Source: Octopus sinensis
Lineage: Eukaryota
NCBI RefSeq assembly: GCF_006345805.1
Contig: NC_043003.1
Coordinates: forward strand, 8,308,001-8,372,000
DNA length: 64,000 nt
Direction: 5' to 3'
A program made the translations under genes and the position numbers. Below the pieces are notes generated by a model. That model was not told the DNA's origin and did not search any database. It was given only the letters and a program-made list of their open reading frames with translations. Of this stretch, positions 6,263-48,827 are shown in pieces (the first letter of the stretch is position 1; each line of letters starts with the position of its first letter).

Positions 6263-7125
6263 GTCTTTGCTAAAGCAGAAGACTCTAATTGTCCTTCATA
6301 GAGGGATCCCTCTATTCTGTTATCAACAATTGTACCCATCAATTTTCCCTTAACTAAATCGCTAATCAGGTTTCTAAACCTGTCTATGCATGAAACGACG
6401 CAGTCATCTTTTATTACCCAGATCCCCTTTATTAGAATTTCATAATTCGACAGGACAAATCAGAATTTATTCACCTATGTAACCAACAACCCGAAGTCGT
6501 TATCAATTTAAACTATCCCTATTGGTTAATGAATTGAAGAATCTATCAAAGAACGACCTGGCTGACCGGTTAATTGCGACTTGTCCATGTTGATGCTTTC
6601 GAAAAATCTGGACGATAATAATAAAGATGATTTTTTTTTTCTCCAGAACCAGGAAATCGATTTATTTCAAAATTTTGATTCAGTTTTGTTAATATGAGAA
6701 TTATAAGAGGACTTCTACAGTGAGAATTGTTGGGTAGATGTAAACCGTAATGAGATGCGACTATTTTTATACTGGAACAAGCAATTCTGATACTGTGAAT
6801 AGAGTAAGAAAAAGTATGGAAGAAGCAAAGTGTAACAAATAGAGAGAAGGAGGGTGAGAGAAAAAAGAGAGATAGAAAGAAAGAAAAAAAAAGAAAGAAA
6901 GAAAGATAGAAAGAAAGAAGGAAATAAGTGAAGAAAGAGAAAGAGAAGAAAATGGTGGGGAAATACGAGTGTTTCAGGAAAATATCTATAGTCTCAATTA
7001 TTTTGCCAGAAATAAATGTCCTTCACACAACTTCATCGAAGCAATCGATGCTCACTATAAACTGTTGTATGTCGGAATATCGATTTCCATTCATCATTTT
7101 CTTATGCACTTATACGTATACGCAA

Positions 7126-7429: not shown

Positions 7430-7481
<52 letters not shown>

Positions 7482-8572
7482 GTATGTATATGCATATGTA
7501 TATGTATACATATATATATATATATGTTTATATAAGTATATATATATGTGGCATATATATATATATATATGTATGTATGTATATACACAGATATATACAC
7601 AGTTACCCAGTGACATGCGTTTATACATATTTCTGAAGCCAAGAGATATATATAACATAATGCGTCAATATTTTGTTTGTTCTTTCAATTTAAACATATT
7701 GAGAAAACAAATAACATCAACTTGATAGCTATTTAAATTCAATATATTTCATAGAAATGTGTAACCAAATATCTCTTCATCTCTCCTCTCAATTCTCTGT
7801 GTGTCTGTGTGTCTCCCTGTCTCTCTCTCACTCTTATAGTGTTTTCAGACTTATTCAATATACCAGATAACGTTGTGTATGTATATGTGTATATATATGT
7901 ATGTGTGTATTTCTCTTTGTGTATGACTGAGTATGCATGCATGTGTGTATCTCAGAAGTAACATTAAAACTATTTCAATCGGAATAATTTCTTCAGGCTT
8001 ATTGATTAAAAGAACGATCTTCAAGCTCATCTGTCCGAAAACTTCGTATGTGCAAGGCGAGGCAGCAGATTAAAACGGATGCAATTACCAACCGCAGCAC
8101 AAGCTATGCACATTAGATATGTCTTCGATAAGAACGACAATGTGCAAGCAACAATATTGTGAAGGATAGAAAATTTCTCACTGGTTGAAAAACAACGGTC
8201 TAAAATCGATTAAATGAACACATTTCTGATAAGTTTAATTTTCAATTAAGTCTGTCACTTATAGACATTTAAAATGTATTAATACGCTCTGGGGAAAACG
8301 AGAAAGTCAAGAAAAATAGAAATTTACCCTAAATTGTTTGACAGATTTGCATACGAAACAACATGCAATGCATTATAAATTAAAATAATTCTTTGGATGA
8401 GGAATCCACACTTGCAGCTGAAAATTACAGACTGAGTCAGATTCTGAATTTCAAATTGAATAATGTTTTCACTATCTCCCACTGGTACACACCAATATGT
8501 TTAGACAGATGAGTTGTTGATCGATATAATGGTGTTTAGAAAAGTGACAGTTATCGATACAAATGATTTTAC

Positions 8573-10494: not shown

Positions 10495-10830
10495 CATTGG
10501 CAAAATATTCTTTTCTACTCTAGGCACAAGGTCCGAAATTTTTGGGGAAAGAGGCCAGTCGATTAGATCGACCCCAGTACACAACTGGTACTTAATTTAT
10601 CGACCCCAAAAGGATGAAAGCAAAGTCGACCTCGGCGTAATTTGAACTCAGAACGTAAAGACAGACGAAATACCGCTAAGCATTTCGCCCGGCGTGCTAA
10701 AGTTACTGCCAGCTCGTCGCCTTCACATTAACAAGATATTGTTTTCTACTCTAGGCACAAGGCCCGAAATTTGAGGGAAGGGGGGCAGTCGATTAGATCG
10801 ACCCCAGTACGCAACTGGTATTTAACTGTA
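10495..10830 (-). mobile_element. tRNA-derived SINE family S1, tail variant 2 (one full and one partial copy)
   Basis: Minus strand head GGCGGCGAGCTGGCAG...GAGTTCAAATT, core GTCGACTTTGCCTTTCATCCTTTCGGGGTCGAT, tail ...CCTTGTGCCTAGAGTAGAAAAGAATATT. Confidence 0.85.
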
Positions 10831-16817: not shown

Positions 16818-17395
16818 ATTCTTTTCTGCTCTAGGCACACGACCCGAAATTTTTTGGGGTGGGGGAGGGTGCCAGTCGATTAGATTGACCCCAGTACGTA
16901 ACTCGAACTTAATTTATCGACCGTGAATGGATGAAAGGTAAAGTCGACTTCTGCGGAATTTGAAATCAGAACGTAAAGACAGATAAAATACCCATTTCTT
17001 TACTACCCATAACGGGCTAAACACAGAGGACAAACAGATTAAGTCGATTACATTAACCCCTGTTCGTAACTGGTACTTATCTAATCGACTCCGAAAGTAT
17101 GAAAGGCAAAGTCAACCTCGGCGGAATTTGAACTCAGAACGTAACGGCAGACAAAATACCTATTTCTTTACTACCCACAAGGGGCTAAACACAGAGGGGA
17201 CAAACAAGGACAGACAAACGGATTAAGTCGATTATGTCGACCCCAGTGCGTAACTGGTACTTATTTAATCGACCCCGGAAGCATAAAAGGCAAAGTCGAC
17301 CTCAGTGGAATTTGAACTCAGAACATAGCGGCAGACGAAATACCGCTAAGCATTTCGCCGTGCGTGCTAACGTTTCCGCCAGCTCGCCGCCTTAC
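16818..17395 (-). mobile_element. Chain of three S1 SINE copies
   Basis: Head at about 17395; tail-to-body junctions at 17160/1 and 16992/3; the last copy carries tail variant 2. Confidence 0.85.
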
Positions 17396-23825: not shown

Positions 23826-24094
23826 TATATGGTATGACAGTTATATAATTTGGGGGTTGAAATTTTGATACAAGGCCTGCAATTTCGGGGTGAGTGGGGT
23901 TAATCAACTACATTGACTCCTATGGTCAACTGGTACATATTTTATCGACACCGAAAAGATAAATAGTAAAACCGACCCCGCAGAATTTGAGTTCAGAACG
24001 TAAAGACTGACAGCATTAACATAACTATAAACTCGAGAAAATCGTTGGTAAAAGAAATACACCCCACTTCTCCTAATGTATGTGGGACTGTATG

Positions 24095-24142
<48 letters not shown>

Positions 24143-24164
24143 TAGATAAACTTAGATATGTTTC

Positions 24165-24640
24165 GACCAATGATTGGTCCAGGCCATGTCTAACTTAATA
24201 GCACCACCTGATAGGATTATTTGAATCCTGTTTAAGTCAAGTTTTGTTTATGGTCCATTCAAGTAGTGAGTTCTTGTTGGGTGAGTTGTATCCAATTATG
24301 GGTGGCTTATCTGGTATTCTTTGAAGGAATCTATCCAGACTCCGTTTAAAGTTGATGGGATCCTGTTCCTCTTTGATCAGTTTCGGGACAATATTAAATA
24401 GGGCAGGGCCTGTTGAGGAAAAGAAATTATGTTGTAGTGTAGATGTATGCTGTGATTTTGAATTGGGCAGGGGACCTGTGGCCCGTGGTCCCAGTCTTGG
24501 ATGAACCTTGAAGCTAATGTTCAGGTCGTTTGGGCAAAGTTGGCGGTATATTCTCCACATCGTACAAATGATGTACCATATGTAACATATGGTATAATTA
24601 TAAACAGGGCAAATTTTAGCCAATTCTCCGCACACAGAAA
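24165..24640 (-). mobile_element. 3-prime fragment of a CR1-group LINE
   Basis: ORF 24237-24635 (...NFKRSLDRFLQRIPDKPPIIGY...) and the 3-prime end GGCCATGTCTAACTTAATAGCAC match the element at 60898-61300. Confidence 0.8.
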
Positions 24641-28119: not shown

Positions 28120-28512
28120 TTTATCATAGGCAAAAGGCCTGAAGTTTTGGGGAAGGGGACTAGTCGGGTACAATGACTCCAGAATTTAACTGGTACTTAA
28201 TTTATCGACCCCGAAAGGATTAAAGTCAAAGTCGACCTCGGCGGAATTTGAACTCAGAACGTAACGGCAGACGAAATATCTGTTTCTTTACTACCCTCAA
28301 GGGGCTAAACACAAAGGGGACAAACAAGGACAGACACACGGATCAAGTCGATTACATCGACCCCAGTGCGTAACTACTACTTATTTAATCGACCCCGAAG
28401 GGATGAAAGACAAAGTCGACCTCGGCGGAATTTGAACTCAGAATGTCGCGACGGGCGAACTACCGCTAAGCATTTCGTCCACCGTGCTAACAACTCCGCC
28501 GGCTCACCGCCT
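28120..28512 (-). mobile_element. Two joined S1 SINE copies
   Basis: Head at about 28510; tail-to-body junction at 28280/1. Confidence 0.85.
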
Positions 28513-29990
28513 TGTCCATGATAAATAATAATAATAAAATGGTTCCTAAGAAAATCATATATGTCTCTAAGCATATGGAGTGTTGTTCTGTTGCATGCGA
28601 TATGCTGAGAATAAGATTAAACTCAAATGGTTGAGGCCTACCGAATTCAACAAGAACTGTGTAATTAAATGAAAGTATATTCTCGTATATTTTTTATAAG
28701 TTAGAAGGCGACTGTAAGAGAGTTAGCAGTTGATTAATATCGGTGAATGAATCATGGCATATTTTGGACGCCACCGAGGATGTCAATGCTGTCCTGTATA
28801 CATGAGCGGTACTCAATGTGGGTCTCATTTGAAATTTATAAATGGTCAACACCAATCAGTTATGTATTTCTTGGTCTTAAAGTTAGATACTGGCTTAATT
28901 TTTGAAAATTAGTCCTGTTACATTTATTCATGTGGATGTCGAAGCGGTTTGGTAGAGACTGAGGGTCATCAATATTTAGCGATTTTGAGGGGATTAGCTG
29001 TAAGATGTTAATAACTAGAAAGAGGAACCTACATTACGTTTCTTTAAAATTTATAGTGATTGAGACTTCGAATTATTGAGATAACATCATCATGATTAAC
29101 CTAAATGGGTTTGGATATCATGTTTTCAGTTCAAACATATTTTCAGCGTCACAAACCATGGAAGCTGTGCACACCGGTCACAACATATTCAAGTTTCTTG
29201 TGGCCGATGCATTTGTATAGAAATGCTGAGCTTCTCTTGCTTCTGTTATCTTTAGCATAACAAGACACAATTTTCGCAGGATTCAGACTTACTAAAGCGC
29301 ACAAAGCAATTACTCCTGAATTAAACAGTAATTTTTTTGCATGGATTCAAGTGACAGATTGATTGCAAATAAAGTATGTGAGTTTATATCTTTTTCAATA
29401 ATATCAGCTGTGTGGCTGGAATCATTTTGTTTAAACAGGAAATCGAAGTCTTCAGCATAATTAAATAATACTATATCACACAGCTATTTGGAGGTCTAGT
29501 TTTACTGAACAAATTCAACTTACAATGTTCGCGATATATCACATAAATATTTTTGAATGTGTGAGTATTCTAGCCAATAATAATAATCACGAATTTGTAT
29601 ATGGTCGTATTATACACTGGCGTTTGAAGCTAAGCTTTTCTCCAGAGAGAAAGAAATATGTTAATGAACAAACGTATTTACACAGCTATACATTATAATG
29701 AAATAAAAATGAAAATTTCCTGCGCAGGTCCACATAAATTCTCTAGACGGGTTGTTTATGGCTCGGAATGTGTTCATGTGTTGGCAGATGTCATCTGCTT
29801 TAAAATATGACATCGCATTTCGCTAATGTTTGGTTTATTCTTTTCGTGTTAGCCTCAAATGTGATTCTATTTCTTTAAAACCGTTGCTATTTTTCCCGTT
29901 CATTGATGTATTTTTATAGCGAAATAATCAACTCGAAGTTATAGTTCAATAAAATAAACTTTCGAAATAATTTTAAAATTATCTTCAATG

Positions 29991-38348: not shown

Positions 38349-38518
38349 TATCTATATATATATATATATATATAATTTATATATAGAGGGCATTATACAT
38401 ACATGCCAGGAAGCATTGTATATACATGCCAAACGCTAAGAGGGACAATCAGTCATTTCTACCAAAAATATTACTAATCCCACCGAATGCAATTTTTCAA
38501 AGTAAACATTTAAAATAT

Positions 38519-38566
38519 AGGCCTGTATCACAGTGATTTCATACTTACGTAATCATCAGCAGGCCT
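38519..38566 (-). ncRNA. Type I hammerhead ribozyme (family D, inverted arm)
   Basis: Exact reverse complement of 40809-40856. Confidence 0.85.
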
Positions 38567-38629
38567 GAATGTATTATAAATAAACAACGACCCTGCCTCG
38601 CTTAGCCGATCAGCTAACTGATCAACATC

Positions 38630-40348
38630 TATTTCTTTATTACCCACTAGGGGCCACGAAGAGGGAACATTACAAAACATGGGGGACATAACAATGCGAT
38701 TAAAATTATGATTAAATGAATGTTAAAATGAAAAAATGATAACATGAAAGCGATGCTAACGGCCCCCTCCGCCAGCATCACTTACCTTTCGTTTCCTATC
38801 ACGATTCCAAAGTTTTTCACCTCACCTTTCATTTCTCTCTCATATCTCTCTATCATATCATCCTTCATAAATGCTGTTATACAATTTATACGTAGTTCAT
38901 TGCACTTGCTCATCAAAGAGCCCATGAGTTCAAAATCGAATACCGCATAACTTCCGTCCTCATACTCCTGCCATACATCGTCTTCAAATAGCCTTCTTGC
39001 GTTCTCAGTATCCCCCTTCCCCACAACACATAAAAAGTAGGACTGGGGCTTTTGTATGTTCTGTGTGTCTGTTTTCGTTTTTCTTGTAGGCGGGGAGTGG
39101 GTGGGATTGCTGTTTGCGGGGGCAGGATGGGTCTCCAAGGGTGTGGGTGGTATTGGGGTGGTTGGGGCTTCGCACAGTTTTTCCTTTCTTTTCTTTCTTC
39201 TCTTCTCTTCTTTCTGCCCTCCTCACACTCTTTTTGCCTCTCCATCTCCTCCTCCTCTGTCATTTTCCCTTTCCGTCTGCTTCTCTTTAATTTCTTCTTC
39301 TTTTGGGGCCTCCTCTTTTGTAGTTTCCTCAACGATTTCCTTTTCTCTTGGTGGGGGAGGGCAGAAGGCTCTTATGTGGCCCCTCAGGCCACACTTGTAA
39401 CAACGTGGAGCTCTGCCCTCCACCCACACTCTCATAATCACGTCTCCCAATTTAATGCTCTCTCCGCCAGGTCCACCAGTACCTCGCTCTCCGCCTGCAC
39501 GTTCAGCTCCACTATTACGCCTCTCCAGCCCTCGGTCTTGACCGAGCATGGAGAATATCTACTTTCTCCTCGTGGCCGCTGATCACAGCCGCCACAATCC
39601 ACTCAGCCTCCACGTTTGGTGGCACTCCCTCCACCCTTACTCGTGTGATCCTTCTATTCAAGTACATAGGTAAAAGTGTTACCCTTTCTGACTTCACCGC
39701 CTTCACCGCCATCCTCCTCGCTGCAGTCTCACTTTTAAAATGCACCACTACAGTACCGTACTTCGATCCTCGAGTCAGAAAAATGATTTCCTCCTCCTCC
39801 GATCTTCTCAGGGCCTCCTCTATCCATTCCATGTTTACGATCTCTATTTTCTTTCTATCGTTCACGAACACCCTGTAAATTATGGTCCTCTTATTGTACC
39901 ATTCCTTTCTCTTTGGTGGTGGTTCCAGTTCCACCTCGCCGCTGTCCTCCTCCTCATATACCTCTGGAAACCTGGCATTTTTTCTAGGTTTATTTCTTTT
40001 TCCTGTTCCGTCTTCTTTTTTGCAACTCCTGCGTACGTTTTCCTGTTTTTTGTCTCCACATTATTTACATCACCGATTTGCTCGTCTTCAGAGTTCGATG
40101 TCTCCGACAAGCTCTCAAATATCCATTCTTCCTCCGACTCCTCCACTAGGTAGTGGTCATCCATTTCCTCCTCCCGCCTGACAGGCCAAAACGGCCGTCA
40201 AAACAGAAAAAGTGTTACGCGCAGAACAGTGGAACGCGAAACCGCTTTAACGCCGTTCAAAATTACCACAACAACAACAACAATTCTTTTTGATCTTTTT
40301 TTTACCGAATTTTACGAGCGTAAAAAAACACGACCGAACTCAAACTGA
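38630..40348 (-). mobile_element. ORF1-only non-LTR retroelement (about 1.72 kb) with a 23-bp TSD
   Basis: CGATCAGCTAACTGATCAACATC is duplicated at 38607-38629 and 40349-40371; the 5-prime end starts TCAGTT; the 3-prime end is ...GTGGGTAATAAAGAAATA; no RT or endonuclease sequence inside. Confidence 0.85.
38782..40164 (-). CDS. Frameshifted Tx1/L1-type ORF1 (gag-like nucleic-acid chaperone) with a CCHC zinc knuckle
   Basis: Overlapping ORFs 39880-40164, 39515-39934, 39223-39549, 38913-39332 and 38782-39138 join into one product with an acidic N-terminus, RRM-like TRVRVEGVPP, and CYKCGLRGHIRAFC (CX2CX4HX4C). Breaks may be mutations or consensus errors. Confidence 0.7.
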
Positions 40349-40808
40349 CGATCAGCTAACTGATCAACATCAACGAAGCACATGGGTGAGTTTATATATA
40401 TTACATCCGGGTAAATGTAAACTTTTACGAATTGCATTTCGGGAGGGGAAAAGTTTTTTTTCGGAATAAAAATTTAGCAATTAAGGACAACTACTTAATA
40501 AGGAAAACTTAACAAGAAATTGTCAGGTAGATAGCGTAAAAACCTCATAAGAGAAAACATTTCTCTTATGAGGTTTTTACGCTATCTACCTGACAATTTC
40601 TTGTTAAGTTTTCCTTATTAAGTAGTTGTCCTTAATTGCTAAATTTTTATTCCGAAAAAACATTTCCCCTCCCGAAATGCAATTCGTAAAAGTTTACCAT
40701 TTACCCGGATGTAATATAATATCAACTCACCCATGTGCTTCGTTGATGTTGATCAGTTAGCTGATCGGCTTAAGCGAGGCAGGGTCGTTGTTTATTTATA
40801 ATATATTC

Positions 40809-40856
40809 AGGCCTGCTGATGATTACGTAAGTATGAAATCACTGTGATACAGGCCT
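40809..40856 (+). ncRNA. Type I hammerhead ribozyme (family D)
   Basis: AGGCCTG-CTGATGA-TTACGTAAGTAT-GAAA-TCA-CTG-TG-ATA^CAGGCCT. 7-bp stem I, TAC/GTA stem II, 4-bp stem III, AUA site. Confidence 0.85.
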
Positions 40857-41128
40857 ATATTTTTAAATGTCTTACTTGAAAAATTGCATTCGGTGCGATT
40901 AGTAATATTTTTGGTAGAAATGACTGATTGTCCCTCTTAGAGTTTGGCATGTATATACAATGCTTCCTGGCATGTATGTATAATGCCCTCTATATATAAA
41001 TTAATATGTTCAATAAGAAATAATTTTTTTTCGAAATTTTTTCTCTTATGAGGTTTTTACGGTATCTACCTGACAATTTCTTGTTAAGTTTTCCTTATTA
41101 AGCTTTGTCCTTAATTGCTATATATATA

Positions 41129-41225
<97 letters not shown>

Positions 41226-41390
41226 ATTATATACATACATACATATATATATATAATATATATATATCACAATCAAGGAACGGCCATAATAGGCCATTCA
41301 CCCACTAGAAATAACAGCCAAAAAGCTTCAACCGCAAAATAACATTAATTCCGTAAACCAGGAGAAAATTAAAAAACATTTACCCTGAAA

Positions 41391-41499
41391 TTCCTTATAC
41401 GATGCAACCGTTTCTTCTACTGTTTAATGGTAAACTAACCTGATTAAATTAAATCAAGCCAATCTACCATAGGCCCTTAGATTCATCATCAGTAAGGAA
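41391..41499 (-). ncRNA. Hammerhead ribozyme with large stem II insertion (family E, unit 1)
   Basis: TTCCTTA/TAAGGAA stem I flanks CTGATGA and GAAACG...CGTA; this copy has an extra TGA. Confidence 0.6.
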
Positions 41500-41887
41500 T
41501 AGCCAAATCGGAACAGATATTTTTCACGAGGCATTCTCGTCCATGCCTCGCCAATATCTGACCTAAAATTTTCAAATCGACGCACTCGCGCCAAATTTAT
41601 CGGCAGCAAATAAATATAAGCCGCCGATTCCATTACGGAACCAACCAGAAAATTCATAATTAATCAATATAGGGAGGCAAAAAAAAATTTTGTAGAATTC
41701 TTTTGCCCCCAGCGGCCTAGTGGGAAAAAATTAAATAGTCATAAACCATTTTTAAGTTCAATATCACAATCAAGGAACGGCCATAATAGGCCATTCACCC
41801 ACTAGAAATAACAGCCAAAAAGCTTCAACCGCAAAATAACATTAATTCCGTAAACCAGGAGAAAATTAAAAAACATTTACCCTGAAA

Positions 41888-41994
41888 TTCCTTATACGAT
41901 GCAACCGTTTCTCTTCTACTGTTTATGGTAAACTAACCTGATTAAATTAAATCAAGCCAATCTACCATAGGCCCTTAGATTCATCAGTAAGGAA
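41888..41994 (-). ncRNA. Hammerhead ribozyme with large stem II insertion (family E, unit 2)
   Basis: Same architecture as 42632-42735. Confidence 0.65.
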
Positions 41995-42631
41995 TAGCCA
42001 AATCGGAACAGATATTTTTCACGAGGCATTCTCGTCCATGCCTCGCCAATATCTGACCTAAAATTTTCAAATCGTCGCACTCGCGCCAAATTTATCGGCA
42101 GCAAATAAATATAAGCCGCCGATTCCATTACGGAACCAACCAGAAAATTCATAATTAATCAATATAGGGAGGCAAAAAAATTTTGTAGAATTCTTTTGCC
42201 CCCAGCGGCCTAGTGGGAAAAATTAAATAGTCATAAACCATTTTTAAGTTCAATATCACAATCAAGGAACGGCCATAATAGGCCATTCACCCACTAGAAA
42301 TAACAGCCAAAAAGCTTCAACCGCAAAATAACATTAATTCCGTAAACCAGGAGAAAATTAAAAAACATTTACCCTGAAATTCCTTATACGATGCACCGTT
42401 TCTTCTACTGTTTAATGGTAAACTAACCTGATTAAATTAAATCAAGCCAATCTACCATCCCTATATTGATTAATTATGAATTTTCTGGTTGGTTCCGTAA
42501 TGGAATCGGCGGCTTATATTTATTTGCTGCCGATAAATTTGGCGCGAGTGCGACGATTTGAAAATTTTAGGTCAGATATTGGCGAGGCATGGACGAGAAT
42601 GCCTCGTGAAAAATCTGTTCCGATTTGGCTA

Positions 42632-42735
42632 TTCCTTACTGATGAATCTAAGGGCTATGGTAGATTGGCTTGATTTAATTTAATCAGGTTAGTTTACCAT
42701 TAAACAGTAGAAGAAACGGTGCATCGTATAAGGAA
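42632..42735 (+). ncRNA. Hammerhead ribozyme with 67-nt stem II insertion (family E, inverted unit)
   Basis: TTCCTTA-CTGATGA-[67 nt]-GAAACG-GTGCAT-CGTA^TAAGGAA. Confidence 0.65.
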
Positions 42736-44280: not shown

Positions 44281-44296
44281 TATATGCATATATGTA

Positions 44297-47200
44297 TTTC
44301 TTTACTACCCACAAGGGGCTAAACACAGAGAGGACAAACAAGGACAGACAAAGGGATTAAGTCGATTACATCGACCCCAGTGCGCAACTGGTACTTAATT
44401 TATCGACCCCGAAAGAATGAAAGGCAAAGTTGACCTCGGCGGAATTTGAACTCAGAACGTAACGGCAGACGAAATACGGCCACGCATTTCGCCCGGCGTG
44501 CTAACGTTTCTGCCGCATATACGCGTGTATGCGGGCGCATGGTCTGGTGGTTAGCGTGTTGTACTCACGATCAGTCGAATGTGGTTTCGATTCCTGGTCG
44601 GAGTGCTGCATTGTGTTCTTGAGCAAAATACTTCATTTCACGTTGCGATGCAATCACCTCGACACATGAAGTGTGATACATCGCGCACCTTTTCGGGCAA
44701 TGACGTCTTGACGGAAGGATTGAACTCACGTCCACTGCAACGATCACTATAAACGAATCATGAGTGCAGCTTATTCAGCTAAACATTGCAGAATTATCTT
44801 TCTCTGACTACGAGAAACAACCATCATATATTCGTGTATGCGTAAGAGCTGATGCCGTGGATACGTCTTGCATAATTATTCATAGATGTTATATAAGTTC
44901 CAGTGTCTGACTGTAACGTATTTAAAGTCTACGAAAGTTTTAATTAATAGCTTGTAATATCAAATTATTCATTTTTTAGTTGATTATAAGCCATTATCTC
45001 ATATTTTATTAAGTATACATTTTCTGAATACTCTCATAGTATTGATTTGCTTTTAACTTCTATCTTCAATAATATATTACACTAAAATGTGTTTGTACGC
45101 TTTCAGATTGGTACACGTTTACAGAGCAGAATCAGTGCGTGTATTCTCACTTGGCAGAAACGTTAGCACGCCGAGCGAAATGCTTAGCCGTATTTCGTCT
45201 GCCATTACGTTCTGAGTTCAAATTCCGCCGAGGTCGACTTTGCCTTTCATCCTTTCGGGATCGATTAAATAAGTACCAGTTACGCACTGGGGTCGATATA
45301 ATCGACTTAATCCGTTTGTCCTTGTTTGTGCTCTCAGTGTTTAGCCCCTTGTGAGTAGTAAAGAAATAGGTATTTTGTCTGTCTTTACGTTCTGAGTTCA
45401 AATTCTGCCGAAGTCGACTTTGCCTTTTTTCCTTTCGGGGGCAGTAAAGAAATAGGTATTTCGTCTGCCGTTACGTTCTGAGTTCACATTCTTCTGAGGT
45501 CGACTTTGCTTTTATCCTTTCAGGGTCGATTAAATAAGTACCAGTTACGCACTGGGGTCGATGTAATCGACTTAATCCGTTTGTCTCTCGTTGTTTCTCC
45601 TCTCTGTGTTTTGCCCCTTGTGGGTAGTAAAGAAATAGGTATGTTTCTTATGATATGTCACTGTTTTACATAATGATGTGAAATATGGGTGCAAGAGTGG
45701 CTGTGTGATATGTAGCTTGCTTACCAACCACATGGTTCAGGGTTCAGTCCCACTGCATGGCACCTTGGGCAAGTGTCTTCTACTATAGCCTCCGGCCGGC
45801 TAAAGCCTTGTGAATAAGAAACGCAGTGGAAACGCTTGATGTCTTGAATGATTAATGAACCTTTATGAAACCGGAAGTTTCAGTCAATATCCCGCAGCAA
45901 TGATTTTTCTTCAGTGGCATACTTTACATTGTTATACACACGAAGTCTATACAAACTGAAATAAACGCATACAAAAAGGCATGCGTAGGTGATATATGTA
46001 CTAATATTTGTTTCAGTATTTTGGCACAAGGCCAGCAATTTCGAGAGAATGGGGTCTGTTACATCGATCCCACGAAAAGATGCAAAGCAATGTCGACCTT
46101 GGTGGGAATTGAACTCAGAACATGAAGATGGACAAAATCCGGCAAACAATTTGCCCAGCCTGCTAATGATTCCGCCAGCTCGACGTCTTAATATATGTTC
46201 TAATATTGGTTTAAAATTTTAGCACAAGGCCAGCAATTTCGGCAGAGGGGCTAAGTCGATTACATCAACCCCTAGTGCTCAACTGTTACTTATTTTATCG
46301 ACCGGAAAAGATGAAAATCAATGTAGACCTCCGCAGAACGTACAGACGGAGAAAATGCCGCTAGCGCGGCATGCTAACGCTTCTACCATTTTGCCGAATT
46401 CATATACGGCTTAATACCCCCATATATTTATGCAGATGTAAGGCAGCTGACTTCTTATATCACCTAATACATATAAAACTATCATTGACCTTACTATTTA
46501 TCAACCTCATCTATGAGGTCATTTAGCATTGTCTTAAACGGCAAGACATAACAGCCAAAACTCCTTCATAGGTTTACCATAAGGTTTAGATATGGTTAAA
46601 TATACGTGATATACTAAAACTGAATGGTATATTTGAGTAGGAGACAAGATATTCACGGTTAGAATATATATCGAACGATAAATTTTTGATATACGGAAAT
46701 AGTTCTCTTGGCACGTGCTGAAGCATTCAGAAAACGGCAGAATCTGCGACTCTGCACGAACTGGGTATAGAAATATTCTACAAAAACTTGATAATATTTA
46801 CAAAATCGCCAAGAAATAACACAACTTACTAATCCTCCAGAATGTACGTGACATTAAAGTGGAAAATGTGGCGTTCAACATCAATTTCAATGATATAAAG
46901 ACGTGCACATAGTAAAAAAAAATATTACAGATAACCATTGAGTTTGTAAATATCACACAGAATCTAATAAACAAATCATTCGTAAACTGTTTCGCAATTA
47001 TATTACACTGAAAGAACGGGCTTTCAATATAAAAACCAGCAACCCGATTCATATTAATATTATTCATTGTCTGTAAGGCGGCGAGCTGGCAGAACCGTTA
47101 GCTCGCCGGGCGAAATGCGTAGCCGTATTCGTCTGCCGCTACGTTCTGAGTTCAAATTCCGCCGAGGTTGACCTTGCTTTTCATCCTTTCGGGGTCGATT

Positions 47201-48822
47201 TGATATGTACCTATTATGCACTGGGGTCGATATAATCGACTTAATCTGTTTGTCTGTCCTTTTTCGTCCCCTCTGTGTTTAGCCCCTTGTGGGTAGTAAA
47301 GAAATAGGTATTTCGTCTGTTTTTAAAGGCGGTGAGCTGGCAGAAACGTTAGCACACCGGGCGAAATTCTTAGCGGTAATTCGTCAAATTCCGCCGAGGT
47401 CGACTTTGCCTTTCATCCTTTTGGGGTCGATTAAATAAGAACCAGTTACGCACTGGGGTCGATGTAATCGACTTAATCCGTTTGTCTGTCCTTGTTTGTC
47501 CCCTCTGTGTTTAGCCCCTTGTGGGTAGTAAAGAAATAATTATTCACTGTCTGTGTGATAAAACGTTTGCTTCCCAACCATTTGGTTCCGGGTTCAGTCC
47601 CACTGCGTGGCGCCTTGGGCAATTCTCTTTTATTATTATCCCATGAAGACCAAATCCTTGAGAGTGGATTTGGTAAACTGTAACTGGAAGAAGCCCATCA
47701 TATAAGAGAATCAAGGTTTTTCAATCTCCCATAACACAGCAGTCACCAAAAGAGACAAATAATTTTTGACGCTTCCTAAAATTGCCAAAAAGCTACATAA
47801 ACAAAAGACAATTATACATTTCTTTATTACCCACAAGGGGCTAAACATAGAGGGGACAAACAAGGACAGACAAAGGTATTAAGTCGATTACATCGACCCA
47901 AGTACGTAACTGGTACTTAATTTATTGACCCCAAAAGGATGAAAGACAAATTCGACCCCGGCAGAATTTGAACTCAGAACGTAACGGCAGACGAAATACG
48001 GCTACGCATTTCGCCCGGTGTGCTAACGTTACTGCCAGCTCGCCGCCTTATAAACAAAAAACAATTATATAAACCGCAAACATAGGAATCGTTTCAGAAT
48101 TACCTCATCATACACATATGCAATGTGGCATAACGACTCCCATACCACTGAAATTCTATTGAAACTTGGATCTACATCAACGGATTTAAAGTAGAACCTA
48201 CCAACTTTGCAGCTTCTTTTCTTAAAATGAAAGACAGGATAATTAAATACAAGCCTTCATTAGTTCAACTACGTTTCTCATCTTAAAAAAACAATCGTGT
48301 TATTCTGGCTGTTCTTCCCTACGTCGGCTCTAACAGAGATGAATTACAGTCAACGTCATTCCCACCGTGGCCATCTGGATTAATGTTATTGGGTTGAATT
48401 ATCCATTGTGCCCTACACATTTTTAAAGACTATATGGGAATATAGGAAAAAGGGAATATTTGATATTCCGTTGCACATCTAAAGGCACATCTAAACAAAA
48501 CAATGAATGATATAATATATGATGTTATCGTTTAACCGAAGCTCATATTCTCCACAACAGTCCAGCCAGTCACCATGTGTTTGTTTGCAAGATATAATGC
48601 ATATATATTTTCTTTATTGCCTACAGGGGTAAACACACAGGGGACAAACAAGGGGATTAAGTCGATTACATCGACCCCAGTGCATAACTGGTACTTATTT
48701 AATCGACCCCGAAAGGATGAAAGGCAAAGTCAACCTTGGCGGAATTTGAACTCAGAACGTAACGGCAGACGAAATACCGCTAAGCATTTCGCCCGGCGTG
48801 CTAACGATTCTGCCAGATTGCC
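44297..48822. mobile_element. Cluster of S1 SINEs
   Basis: Copies at about 44297-44515(-), 45140-45640(+, chain), 46010-46400(-), 47074-47540(+, two), 47820-48050(-) and 48605-48822(-). Confidence 0.85.
46690..46790 (+). pseudogene. Possible Penelope-like GIY-YIG C-terminal remnant
   Basis: EIVLLARAEAFRK..ICDSA-like reading with frameshifts, resembling the W-x-I-x-x-R-A-x-x-Y/F...C-x-L-C motif. Confidence 0.3.
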
Positions 48823-48827
48823 GCAGA

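What the first reader, a model, noticed from the sequence alone, without database searches (positions are those of the whole stretch)
38630..38700. The S1 SINE and the ORF1-only element share a 3-prime tail
The element end CCCTAGTGGGTAATAAAGAAATA matches the SINE end CCCTTGTGGGTAGTAAAGAAATA (21 of 23), with looser similarity for about 50 more bases. SINE/LINE tail sharing is the established sign of a common mobilising RT. This points to a three-part system: an unseen autonomous LINE, an ORF1-only helper or parasite, and the dominant SINE.
Basis: partly seen in the sequence, partly recalled or inferred. Interest (0 to 1): 0.7.

Follow-up and report, generated by a model that had tools for sequence, protein, structure and literature searches.

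The report
Octopus LINE, half-LINE, SINE share tail
In an octopus genome, a 1.7-kb retrotransposon that carries only the first LINE gene ends in the same ~45-base tail as the window's commonest SINE and as a complete L1-type LINE found at other octopus loci, so all three probably depend on that LINE's reverse transcriptase; this is a familiar kind of system, seemingly not yet described for octopus.

Summary
The 23-mer matches 21/23. With up to 3 mismatches it occurs 10 times in the window against 0 expected: nine SINE ends and this element's end. Similarity is solid for 42 nt and only marginal beyond that.

The element (38630-40348, minus strand, 1719 bp) is a complete retrotransposed unit with a perfect 23-bp target-site duplication. 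It carries one decayed ORF and no RT.

Loci from Octopus vulgaris and O. sinensis hold LINEs with three parts: an ORF1 homologous to the element's ORF, an ORF2 (endonuclease + RT + zf-RVT, closest solved relative human L1 ORF2p), and a 3' end ...GCCCCTTGTGGGTAATAAAGAAAT.

The tail was not captured by this one copy. A 96%-identical copy in O. sinensis has an intact 463-aa ORF and its own 15-bp duplication. A sister family (about 65% nt identity over the ORF) also carries the tail.

Both ORF1-only families keep the LINE's ORF1-stop/ORF2-start junction (TAAGTGATG) and then lack ORF2, which points to a single old deletion. Their ORFs differ with dN/dS of about 0.2.

Verdict: interpretation supported. 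This is a new member of known kinds (SINE/LINE tail sharing; HAL1/HeT-A-like half-LINEs). Trans-mobilisation is inferred, not shown.

The parts
38630..40348 (-). Full-length copy of an ORF1-only ('half-LINE') non-LTR retrotransposon, 1719 bp: 5' UTR, one decayed ORF, 152-nt 3' UTR, no RT or endonuclease
   Evidence: Boundaries are set by a perfect 23-bp TSD. It is the only copy in the window. It is 96% identical to L006 2492-4185 (O. sinensis), which has its own 15-bp TSD. No ORF2-like sequence lies in or near it.
40349..40371 (-). Upstream copy of the target-site duplication GATGTTGATCAGTTAGCTGATCG
   Evidence: Read directly from the sequence; programmatic TSD search.
38607..38629 (-). Downstream copy of the target-site duplication GATGTTGATCAGTTAGCTGATCG
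38782..40164 (-). Decayed ORF1-type reading frame (about 460 codons): acidic N-terminus, two RRM-like domains, CCHC knuckle CYKCGLRGHIRAFC, E/K-rich linker, C-terminal domain. Broken by frameshifting indels relative to the intact O. sinensis copy.
   Evidence: Translation. Indels against the intact 463-aa ORF of L006: +2 at about 39950, -1 at 39546, +2 at 39464, +1 at 39266, +2 at 39199, +4 at 39191, -1 at 39161. 294 homologues in an exhaustive phmmer search. Homologous to ORF1 of the L002/L006 LINEs. Tandem-RRM fold for the homologous LINE ORF1.
38776..38784 (-). Retained LINE inter-ORF junction TAA-GTG-ATG (ORF1 stop plus ORF2 start codon); the ORF2 body is missing after it
   Evidence: Alignment with the ORF1/ORF2 junctions of four LINE copies and the L001 sister family.
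38630..38781 (-). 3' UTR of the element. The last ~65 nt are homologous to LINE 3' UTR ends, and the last 42 nt (38630-38671) to the SINE tail.
17161..17393 (-). Full-length SINE copy (233-bp consensus) ending in the shared tail
16994..17160 (-). Partial SINE (consensus positions 50-232) ending in the tail, directly behind the previous copy
28283..28513 (-). SINE copy ending in the tail
44295..44514 (-). SINE copy (5'-truncated at position 14) ending in the tail
45152..45637 (+). SINE array [13-233][50-136][50-233] with two tails
47075..47538 (+). Two full SINE copies joined head to tail, flanked by a single 16-bp TSD ATTATTCAYTGTCTGT
47818..48049 (-). SINE copy ending in the tail (GGGTAATAAAGAAATG), 20-bp TSD
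48609..48824 (-). SINE copy aligning to consensus positions 4-231; its tail was not among the 23-mer matches at 3 or fewer mismatches
   Evidence: Aligned by blastn; absent from the pattern hits.

Best explanation
The window comes from an Octopus genome. The finding marks the 3' end of a 1.7-kb ORF1-only non-LTR retrotransposon, a 'half-LINE'. It descends from an L1/Tx1-type LINE by a clean loss of ORF2: the ORF1 stop/ORF2 start junction TAAGTGATG is still present, and the sequence then runs straight into a shortened 3' UTR. Three kinds of element all end in one conserved block, ...TGTCCCCTCT-TGTT-GCCCCTTGTGGGTA followed by an A-rich end: the autonomous LINE family (ORF1, then ORF2 = endonuclease-RT-zinc finger), the half-LINE, and the window's commonest 233-bp SINE. 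The most likely mechanism is as follows. ORF2p of the LINE recognises this 3' block on RNA and starts target-primed reverse transcription there. The half-LINE RNA and the SINE RNA carry the same block and are copied in trans, producing insertions with 15-23-bp target-site duplications. The half-LINE lineage appears to need its own ORF1 protein, because the ORF has stayed under purifying selection since the ORF2 loss. Shown: the anatomy, the homologies, the existence of the LINE, and the independent copies. Inferred: recognition of the tail by ORF2p, trans-mobilisation, and the role of ORF1p.
For: Tail: 10 occurrences against 0 expected, with a solid 42-nt alignment. Element boundaries: perfect 23-bp TSD. 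ORF1 homology: 294 homologues in an exhaustive search. The element ORF's core is 39% identical (E 1e-33) to P0002 (CAI9742213.1, O. vulgaris). In L002, P0002 lies upstream of an ORF2 that is a 1132-aa open frame in one unit, with Exo_endo_phos + RVT_1 + zf-RVT; the ORF2 following P0002 itself is split in two. That ORF2's best solved relative is human L1 ORF2p (E 2e-71 over 866 aa). LINE 3' ends: L002 ...TTGTCCCCTCTTTGTTGGCCCCTTGTGGGTAAATAAAATAAAA. L006 LINE A ...GGCCCCTTGTGGGTAATAAAGAAAT, with LINE B and LINE C variants. The tails are 78-87% identical between element classes (SINE consensus, window half-LINE, LINEs A-C and L002) over about 47 nt; pairs involving the L001 half-LINE are lower, 63-76%. 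The LINE tail hits SINE tails and the element tail in the window at 85-90% identity over about 40 nt, best E 3e-7. Not a one-copy capture: L006 2492-4185 is a 96%-identical copy with an intact 463-aa ORF, its own 15-bp TSD and an identical tail. L001 5472-7067 is a sister family, about 65% nt identity over the ORF, with a ~20-bp TSD, a related 5' end, and the tail ...CCCTTTATGGATAAATAAAGAAAT. L007 holds a still shorter derivative with a related tail. Single origin of the ORF2 loss: both half-LINE families keep AGGTAAG[T/C]GATG and share the downstream 3' UTR. They also cluster apart from the LINE ORF1s in a neighbour-joining tree, with bootstrap 87.5 against 95.5. Selection: pS 0.68 against pN 0.30, dN/dS about 0.22, Fisher p 5e-24 over 338 codons. 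SINE TSDs of 16 and 20 bp resemble the half-LINE's 15-23 bp.
Against: No LINE of this family lies in the window, so partnership rests on other loci and other species' assemblies. Only a handful of copies were seen, and copy numbers and activity periods are unknown. The half-LINE ORF is not nested among the sampled LINE ORF1s (33-38% identity), so its direct parent LINE was not found. Its nearest relatives, P0006 and P0011, have no recoverable genomic context. The conserved tail shows only a 4-bp hairpin with no covariation, so no recognised RNA structure is demonstrated. The LINE copies examined sit in head-to-tail arrays without clear TSDs, so their own insertion signature could not be compared. 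dS is saturated, so dN/dS is rough. Part of the constraint could predate the ORF2 loss if the two families arose separately, although the shared junction argues against that. The SINE head gave no tRNA or Rfam match.
Confidence: 0.8

Rival explanations
1. The tail on the element is a piece of SINE picked up by this one copy, through a SINE inserted at its end or 3' transduction. On this view there is no shared system.
For: The window holds only one copy of the element. SINEs in this genome often lie directly behind other tails.
Against: The same tail ends a 96%-identical copy with a different TSD in O. sinensis, a diverged sister family, a shorter derivative in L007, and four LINE subfamilies. 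The element and the LINEs share an upstream block (ATGTCCCCCATG / TGACCCCACATCAG) that the SINE lacks. The TSD encloses the tail.
Confidence: 0.02
2. The element is a one-off dead LINE copy with an internal deletion, or a 5'-truncated or rearranged insertion. On this view it is not a self-propagating ORF1-only lineage.
For: The window copy is decayed, with about seven frameshifting indels. LINE copies with internal deletions are common in genomes (general knowledge).
Against: Three independent insertions have their own TSDs of 23, 15 and about 20 bp and the same architecture. Two families about 65% identical at nucleotide level over the ORF share the same deletion junction. One copy has an intact 463-aa ORF. 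Purifying selection acts between the families.
Confidence: 0.05
3. The similarity of tails reflects convergent or independent acquisition: the SINE or half-LINE is mobilised by a different RT, for example the RTE, CR1 or Dong elements also active in octopus. On this view the shared block is a leftover of ancestry without present function.
For: No functional test exists. The conserved block shows no covarying structure. Octopus has several active LINE clades (PMC13282606; PMC9115989). A second SINE family with the same body carries a different tail, showing that tails are exchanged.
Against: The block is conserved over the terminal ~45 nt in elements whose other parts have diverged beyond recognition. 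LINE subfamilies are 76-92% identical overall, and half-LINE ORFs are 50% identical at protein level, yet the tails stay at 63-87%. The CR1-like LINEs in the window have unrelated tails. Tail exchange in the second SINE family is what the stringent-recognition model predicts.
Confidence: 0.1
4. The ORF1-only unit is a host gene or domesticated gag-like gene (ZCCHC3-like) and its retrocopies, not a transposon.
For: Fish LINEs related to the octopus ORF2 carry ORF1s with Pfam ZCCHC3 RNA-binding domains. RefSeq and GenBank annotate the octopus homologues as ordinary proteins.
Against: Copies have LINE-type 5' and 3' ends, TSDs and the LINE inter-ORF junction, and they decay after insertion. They lie inside other repeats: a foldback element, a SINE, and a LINE 5' end.
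Confidence: 0.03

Closest known systems
SINE/LINE pairs with a common 3' tail (stringent recognition), e.g. eel UnaSINE1/UnaL2 and tortoise Pol III SINE/CR1 (Ohshima et al. 1996; Kajikawa & Okada 2002, as cited in PMC4824008)
   Same: A short non-coding retroposon ends in the last ~40-50 nt of an RT-encoding LINE of the same genome. The tail is not a plain poly(A).
   Different: The partner here is an L1/Tx1-type element with ORF1 and a zf-RVT, not an L2, CR1 or RTE element. No conserved stem-loop with covariation was detected. Recognition is untested.
HAL1 ('half-L1') of mammals (Bao & Jurka 2010; recalled from memory, mentioned in PMC5753468 and PMC5786205)
   Same: A non-autonomous derivative of an L1-clade LINE that keeps only ORF1 and persists as its own lineage, presumably using ORF2p in trans.
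   Different: The host is an invertebrate. The ORF1 is of the RRM + CCHC type rather than the mammalian coiled-coil/RRM/CTD type. The ORF1 stop/ORF2 start junction is retained, and the end is a specific tail rather than poly(A).
Drosophila HeT-A with TART/TAHRE (own knowledge)
   Same: A Gag/ORF1-only non-LTR retrotransposon coexists with RT-encoding relatives that share end sequences. Head-to-tail arrays occur.
   Different: Those elements are telomere-specific and belong to the Jockey clade. Nothing here indicates telomeric targeting.
Alu/SVA with human L1 (relaxed, poly(A)-based trans-mobilisation)
   Same: The RT is L1-superfamily: the octopus ORF2 aligns with human ORF2p over 866 aa at E 2e-71. 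TSDs are 15-23 bp.
   Different: Here about 45 nt of specific sequence is shared, which suggests sequence-specific rather than poly(A) recognition.
Octopus repeat annotations: tRNA-Core and tRNA-Deu SINEs, L1-Tx1 LINEs (PMC8967140, PMC13282606); OR1/OR2/OK SINEs (Ohshima & Okada 1994, cited in PMC4824008)
   Same: The organisms are the same. L1-Tx1 is listed among recently active O. vulgaris LINEs (13 families, 421 insertions), and SINEs make up 11.6% of the genome.
   Different: In those papers' main texts I found no statement of a SINE-LINE tail partnership or of ORF1-only elements. The terms 'tail', 'ORF1' and 'non-autonomous' occur 0 times in PMC13282606. I could not check whether this SINE is OR1, OR2 or OK, or whether Repbase/Dfam already hold these consensi.

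Membership tests
SINE/LINE pair with shared 3' tail | The 3' end of the SINE is homologous to the 3' end of an RT-encoding LINE of the same genus | tested here: met
   The SINE consensus matches LINE B at 41/48, LINE A at 39/49 and the L002 LINE at 39/49 over the terminal ~47 nt. The LINE tail hits SINE tails in the window by blastn, best E 3e-7.
SINE/LINE pair with shared 3' tail | The LINE encodes endonuclease and reverse transcriptase | tested here: met
   Exo_endo_phos 1.9e-15, RVT_1 8e-31, zf-RVT 5e-9 on a 1132-aa open ORF2. Human L1 ORF2p matches at E 2e-71.
SINE/LINE pair with shared 3' tail | The SINE head derives from a small RNA (tRNA, 5S or 7SL) with an internal pol III promoter | tested here: inconclusive
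   ARAGORN found 0 genes. Rfam gave no match at the gathering threshold and no small-RNA match (only two weak chance-level hits outside the SINE copies) at E up to 10 over three copies. A-box-like TTAGCACGCCGGG and B-box-like GAGTTCAAATTCC were seen by eye only.
SINE/LINE pair with shared 3' tail | The tail is required for mobilisation by the partner RT | not testable with these tools
   This needs a retrotransposition assay.
SINE/LINE pair with shared 3' tail | A conserved 3' stem-loop is recognised by the RT | tested here: inconclusive
   RNAalifold on 10 tails finds only a 4-bp hairpin GCCC/GGGU with no compensatory changes.
ORF1-only non-autonomous LINE derivative (HAL1 / HeT-A kind) | The single ORF is homologous to ORF1 of an autonomous LINE | tested here: met
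   34-38% identity over about 280-300 aa to ORF1 of LINEs A, B, C and L002, with the same domain order including the C-terminal domain. The homologous LINE ORF1 (P0002) is predicted as tandem RRM folds, pLDDT above 90 for about residues 80-280.
ORF1-only non-autonomous LINE derivative (HAL1 / HeT-A kind) | Full-length copies bounded by TSDs lack RT and EN | tested here: met
   Window copy: 1719 bp with a 23-bp TSD. L006 copy: 15-bp TSD. L001 copy: about 1.6 kb with a ~20-bp TSD. None has ORF2.
ORF1-only non-autonomous LINE derivative (HAL1 / HeT-A kind) | It shares terminal sequences with the autonomous element | tested here: met
   At the 3' end, the last ~65 nt are homologous. The inter-ORF junction TAAGTGATG is retained. 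Similarity at the 5' end is weak and was not tested statistically.
ORF1-only non-autonomous LINE derivative (HAL1 / HeT-A kind) | It persists as a lineage with the ORF under purifying selection | tested here: met
   The two families are 50% identical in protein, with dN/dS about 0.22 and Fisher p 5e-24. They share the deletion junction and form a clade with bootstrap 87.5. Caveats: dS is saturated and few copies were sampled.
L1 superfamily (L1/Tx1) LINE | ORF2 with an N-terminal APE endonuclease, an RT, and a C-terminal Cys-rich zf-RVT | tested here: met
   The alignment to human ORF2p covers EN and RT, against RT only for R2.
L1 superfamily (L1/Tx1) LINE | RT falls inside the L1/Tx1 clade in an RT phylogeny | not tested
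   No reference RT set was available. Support is indirect: the best PDB hits are L1 ORF2p, related fish elements carry ZCCHC3-type ORF1 plus zf-RVT, and L1-Tx1 is annotated in O. vulgaris.
CORE-, Deu- or Ceph-SINE superfamily | A shared central domain | not tested
   No reference sequences were at hand. The literature says octopus SINEs are mainly tRNA-Core and tRNA-Deu (PMC8967140).

The most novel reading that the evidence does not exclude
The ORF1-only element is not debris. It is an old, selectively maintained half-LINE lineage that makes its own RRM/zinc-knuckle ORF1 protein and competes with its L1/Tx1-type relatives and the SINE for ORF2p through one shared 3' recognition block. If so, L1/Tx1-type LINEs would be the engine of the octopus-specific SINE expansion (about 12% of the genome), rather than the RTE element highlighted in octopus brain studies.
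Probability: 0.5. Interest if true: 0.6.

Novelty: new member of a known kind. Interest (0 to 1): 0.5.

Why it matters
SINEs are the largest single repeat class of octopus genomes: 11.6% of O. vulgaris (PMC13282606), and their expansion is regarded as octopus-specific (PMC8967140). The octopus papers I could search do not say which LINE drives them. The only element studied functionally is an RTE (PMC9115989). A tail shared with an L1/Tx1-type LINE names a concrete candidate driver and gives a short sequence that can be mutated in a retrotransposition assay. The half-LINE adds an invertebrate parallel to mammalian HAL1 and Drosophila HeT-A. It is a natural experiment on whether ORF1 protein is needed in cis when the RT is borrowed. 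For annotation, the octopus 'uncharacterized protein' and 'EPM2A-interacting 1-like' gene models (XP_036368115.1, XP_036361568.1, CAI9742213.1) are ORF1s of these transposons.

Tried and rejected
- Word-indexed protein search with the whole conceptual ORF, and again with its 190-aa core, found nothing. The exhaustive phmmer search was needed.
- Pfam on the element's ORF pieces gave only a sub-threshold zf-CCHC. Pfam's ZCCHC3 RNA-binding-domain models hit the related fish LINE ORF1 but not the octopus ones.
- I suspected that the whole 3' UTR was a degenerate SINE, with head-like GCTGGCGGAG...CGTTAGCA. The shuffle test puts this at chance level, so I rejected it.
- A search for a conserved tail stem-loop found only a 4-bp hairpin with no covariation.
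- ARAGORN and Rfam on the SINE found nothing.
- The CR1-like LINE fragments in the window were checked as possible partners. Their tails (hairpin + ATCAAAGT or ATCTAAGTTT repeats) are unrelated.
- Contig look-ups for P0006, P0011 and P0057 (the nearest relatives of the half-LINE ORF) and for a window ORF were not on record, so the direct parent LINE and the window's exact source remain unidentified.
- L003 is too short to use. L004 is cut before the tail. L005 is a LINE with a similar ORF1 but an unrelated tail; its source organism was not identified.
- No consistent endonuclease target motif emerged from my reading of the five clear TSDs (sequences).
Full report
**Observation**

With up to three mismatches the SINE 23-mer occurs ten times in the 64-kb window, against none in 100 dinucleotide shuffles. 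Nine occurrences are the 3' ends of copies of one SINE, whose 233-bp consensus I built from the window copies. The tenth ends the element in question.

Smith-Waterman alignment of the element's 3' UTR to the SINE consensus gives a firm 42-nt block with 34 identities. Further upstream the similarity is marginal: an end-anchored alignment is reached by 49 of 1000 shuffles, and an unanchored one is at chance level. A tempting resemblance between the start of the 3' UTR and the SINE head is also at chance level.

**The element in the window**

Read on the minus strand, the element runs from 40348 to 38630 (1719 bp). It is flanked by a perfect 23-bp target-site duplication, GATGTTGATCAGTTAGCTGATCG, at 40371-40349 and 38629-38607. 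It landed in one arm of a large palindromic repeat (arms 38380-38630 and 41000-40745). That makes the empty site easy to read and the boundaries unambiguous.

It holds one reading frame from 40164 to 38782 and a 152-nt 3' UTR. tblastn with a LINE ORF2 finds nothing in or near it. The frame is broken by frameshifting indels. It encodes, in order:
- an acidic N-terminus;
- a core of about 190 aa ending in the zinc knuckle CYKCGLRGHIRAFC;
- an E/K-rich linker;
- a C-terminal domain.

Pfam recognises only a sub-threshold zf-CCHC. The element is single-copy in the window.

**Relatives and the organism**

Word-indexed protein searches failed. An exhaustive phmmer search with the 190-aa core found 294 proteins at E of 1e-3 or better. 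The best hits that could be located lie in chromosome-scale assemblies of Octopus sinensis and O. vulgaris. They are XP_036368115.1, XP_036361568.1 and CAI9742213.1, annotated as "uncharacterized" or "EPM2A-interacting 1-like". SINE copies in those loci are 89-97% identical to the window's best-preserved copies, so the window is from an Octopus genome.

**The autonomous LINE**

Locus L002 (O. vulgaris) holds three head-to-tail units of 5278 bp. Each unit has three parts.

*ORF1.* It is 39% identical to the element's core. It continues, through a frameshift in an A-rich stretch, into a C-terminal domain like that of the element.

*ORF2.* It starts three bases after the ORF1 stop. In the first unit it is an open 1132-aa frame; in the second it is split in two. 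It has Exo_endo_phos, RVT_1 and zf-RVT domains. It aligns with human L1 ORF2p over 866 residues (E 2e-71), against RT-only matches to R2 proteins.

*3' UTR.* It is 254 nt and ends ...TTGTATTGTCCCCTCTTTGTTGGCCCCTTGTGGGTAAATAAAATAAAA.

Locus L006 (O. sinensis) holds three further LINE copies of different subfamilies, 76-92% identical to L002. They end ...GGCCCCTTGTGGGTAATAAAGAAAT (LINE A)...CGCCCCTTGTGGGTAGTAATAAAAT (LINE B) and ...TGCCCCTTGTGGGTAATAATAAAA (LINE C). LINE A's end matches the element's end except for one base in the core and the final A.

Over the terminal ~47 nt, the SINE consensus, the window half-LINE and the LINE tails are 78-87% identical pairwise, and pairs involving the L001 half-LINE are 63-76%. 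The LINE tail finds the SINE and element tails in the window by blastn, best E 3e-7.

Published repeat annotation lists L1-Tx1 among recently active O. vulgaris LINEs (PMC13282606). I did not build an RT tree, so "L1/Tx1-type" rests on domain architecture and best matches.

AlphaFold2 on the LINE ORF1 with 32 homologues gives a confident core (pLDDT above 90 for about residues 80-280). Its best structural matches are tandem-RRM proteins: SFPQ/NONO, IMP3 RRM12, HuC and nucleolin. This is the "RRM plus CCHC" type of LINE ORF1.

**The tail belongs to the ORF1-only family**

L006 2492-4185 is a second copy of the same element, 96% identical. It has its own 15-bp duplication (GGATGTGATATAATG), an intact 463-aa ORF and an identical tail.

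L001 5472-7067 (O. sinensis) is a sister family:
- about 65% nucleotide identity over the ORF and 50% protein identity;
- about 1.6 kb, inserted into a SINE head with a ~20-bp duplication;
- a related 5' end (TTTGACACTTCGTGTTTTTTT... versus TCAGTTTGAGTTCGGTCGTGTTTTTTT...);
- the tail ...CCCTTTATGGATAAATAAAGAAAT.

L007 comes from assembly GCA_001194135.2, which I take from memory to be O. bimaculoides. It holds a shorter derivative of roughly 0.9 kb with half the ORF and a related tail...TTGCCCCTTCTGGGCAATTAAGAAATA. The element and the LINEs also share an upstream 3' UTR block that the SINE lacks. "Captured by this copy only" is thus excluded.

**How the half-LINE arose, and whether its ORF matters**

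In four LINE copies the ORF1 stop and the ORF2 start lie in a conserved string: ATAAGGTAAGTGATGAAC... (or GTAATG, GTTATG in other copies). Both ORF1-only families keep AGGTAAG[T/C]GATG and then continue into a shared, shortened 3' UTR instead of ORF2. The simplest reading is one ancestral deletion, running from just after the ORF2 ATG to shortly after the ORF2 stop.

In a neighbour-joining tree of ORF1 proteins the three ORF1-only copies form a clade (bootstrap 87.5). That clade is distinct from the clade of LINE ORF1s (bootstrap 95.5). P0011 and P0006, whose context is unknown, are its nearest relatives.

Between the two ORF1-only families, synonymous differences (150 of 222 sites) far exceed non-synonymous ones (236 of 792). 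This gives dN/dS of about 0.22 and Fisher p of 5e-24. Individual copies decay after insertion: the window copy has 32 substitutions and 17 internal indels against the O. sinensis copy.

I infer that the lineage has propagated for a long time as an ORF1-only element whose active masters need a working ORF1 protein, as proposed for HAL1 and HeT-A. Three caveats apply. dS is saturated, few copies were sampled, and the direct parent LINE was not found.

**Mechanism**

Shown:
- three classes of retroposon share a terminal block, TGTCCCCTCT-TGTT-GCCCCTTGTGGGTA plus an A-rich end;
- only one class encodes EN and RT;
- half-LINE insertions (15, ~20 and 23 bp) and SINE insertions (16 and 20 bp) have similar long duplications.

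Inferred from the established model of stringent LINE/SINE partnership (Ohshima et al. 1996; Kajikawa & Okada 2002, cited in PMC4824008):
- ORF2p recognises the block on RNA and primes reverse transcription there;
- it therefore mobilises SINE and half-LINE RNAs in trans.

I could not show a recognised structure. RNAalifold finds only a 4-bp hairpin without covariation. Whether the half-LINE helps (by supplying extra ORF1p) or merely competes cannot be told from sequence.

**Comparison with what is known, and novelty**

SINE/LINE tail sharing and ORF1-only LINE derivatives are both established kinds, so this is a new member rather than a new kind. In the octopus literature I could search, the functional work concerns an RTE element (PMC9115989). 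Repeat surveys list SINE and L1-Tx1 abundances without naming partners or ORF1-only elements (PMC8967140, PMC13282606). I could not consult Repbase, Dfam or SINEBase, so priority is uncertain.

Interest is moderate. The finding names a candidate driver of the octopus SINE expansion and offers an invertebrate parallel to HAL1.

**Limits**

- No copy-number or age data.
- No RT phylogeny.
- The SINE head could not be tied to a tRNA.
- The LINE copies seen are all in head-to-tail arrays, so their own TSDs were not observed.

Noticed in passing
window 16874-17393(-), 28162-28513(-), 45152-45637(+); L007 about 7460-7600(-): SINE tails are repeatedly followed, with no spacer, by a partial SINE that restarts at consensus position 50-52 (GGTATTTCGTCTGCC...). 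The same breakpoint recurs at independent loci and in another species. This suggests an RT stop at position ~50 followed by a template jump onto another RNA's 3' end, or composite master copies.
   Followed up: partly
window 47075-47538(+): Two full SINE copies, joined by GGTATTTCGTCTGTTTTTA, are flanked by a single 16-bp TSD (ATTATTCAYTGTCTGT). The dimer therefore went in as one unit.
   Followed up: partly
L002 2445-17026; L006 4200-20850; L007 8667 onward: The L1/Tx1-type LINEs lie in direct tail-to-head arrays. L002 has three 99%-identical units. L006 has units of different subfamilies (76-92% identical). In L007 a different ORF1 element starts right after a tail. No TSDs are visible between units. 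Either insertion prefers element ends or end-to-end template jumping occurs.
   Followed up: partly
window 10557-10723(-), 23870-24040(-), the ends of the arrays at 16874 and 28162; L001 7056-7490: A second SINE family has the same head and body but a different tail (...CCCCAAAAATTTCGGACCTTGTGCCTAGAGTAGAAAA). This is a tail swap that implies a second, unidentified LINE partner.
   Followed up: no
window 38630-38778(-); L001 about 6900-7050: The retained ORF2 ATG opens a 44-46-codon hydrophobic frame through the 3' UTR in both half-LINE families: MLAEGAVSIAFMLSFF...LCPPCFVMFPLRGP* and MLSDGVGNSAFIFHF...LCPQCVVCLLSSSTLYG*. It stops inside the tail. In the L006 copy it is disrupted by a 2-nt insertion. 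This may be chance.
   Followed up: no
window 60900-63200(-) and 24160-24635(-): Decayed CR1-like LINE fragments carry the typical C-terminal FKxSLDxFL motif and tails made of a hairpin plus (ATCAAAGT)n or (ATCTAAGTTT)n. They are unrelated to the tail studied here.
   Followed up: partly
window 38380-41000: A large palindrome or foldback repeat (outer arms of about 250 bp, plus an inner ~365-bp hairpin at 40380-40745) hosts the half-LINE insertion. Next to it, at 41300-42700, are tandem ~500-bp repeats, each with a 65-67-codon ORF (MNFLVGSVMESAAYIYLLPINLARVRRFENF...).
   Followed up: no
L002 9329-9339; L006 LINE B, LINE C: The ORF1 stop and the ORF2 start are separated by only 3 nt (TAA GTG ATG). 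This suggests translation of ORF2 by termination-reinitiation.
   Followed up: no
public records XP_036368115.1, XP_036361568.1 (O. sinensis), CAI9742213.1 (O. vulgaris): These gene models, annotated as 'uncharacterized protein' or 'EPM2A-interacting 1-like', are ORF1 fragments of these retrotransposons.
   Followed up: yes
window about 56700-56800: A run of unknown bases (N) lies inside the window. It shows up as a run of X in the ORF at 56618-56962.
   Followed up: no
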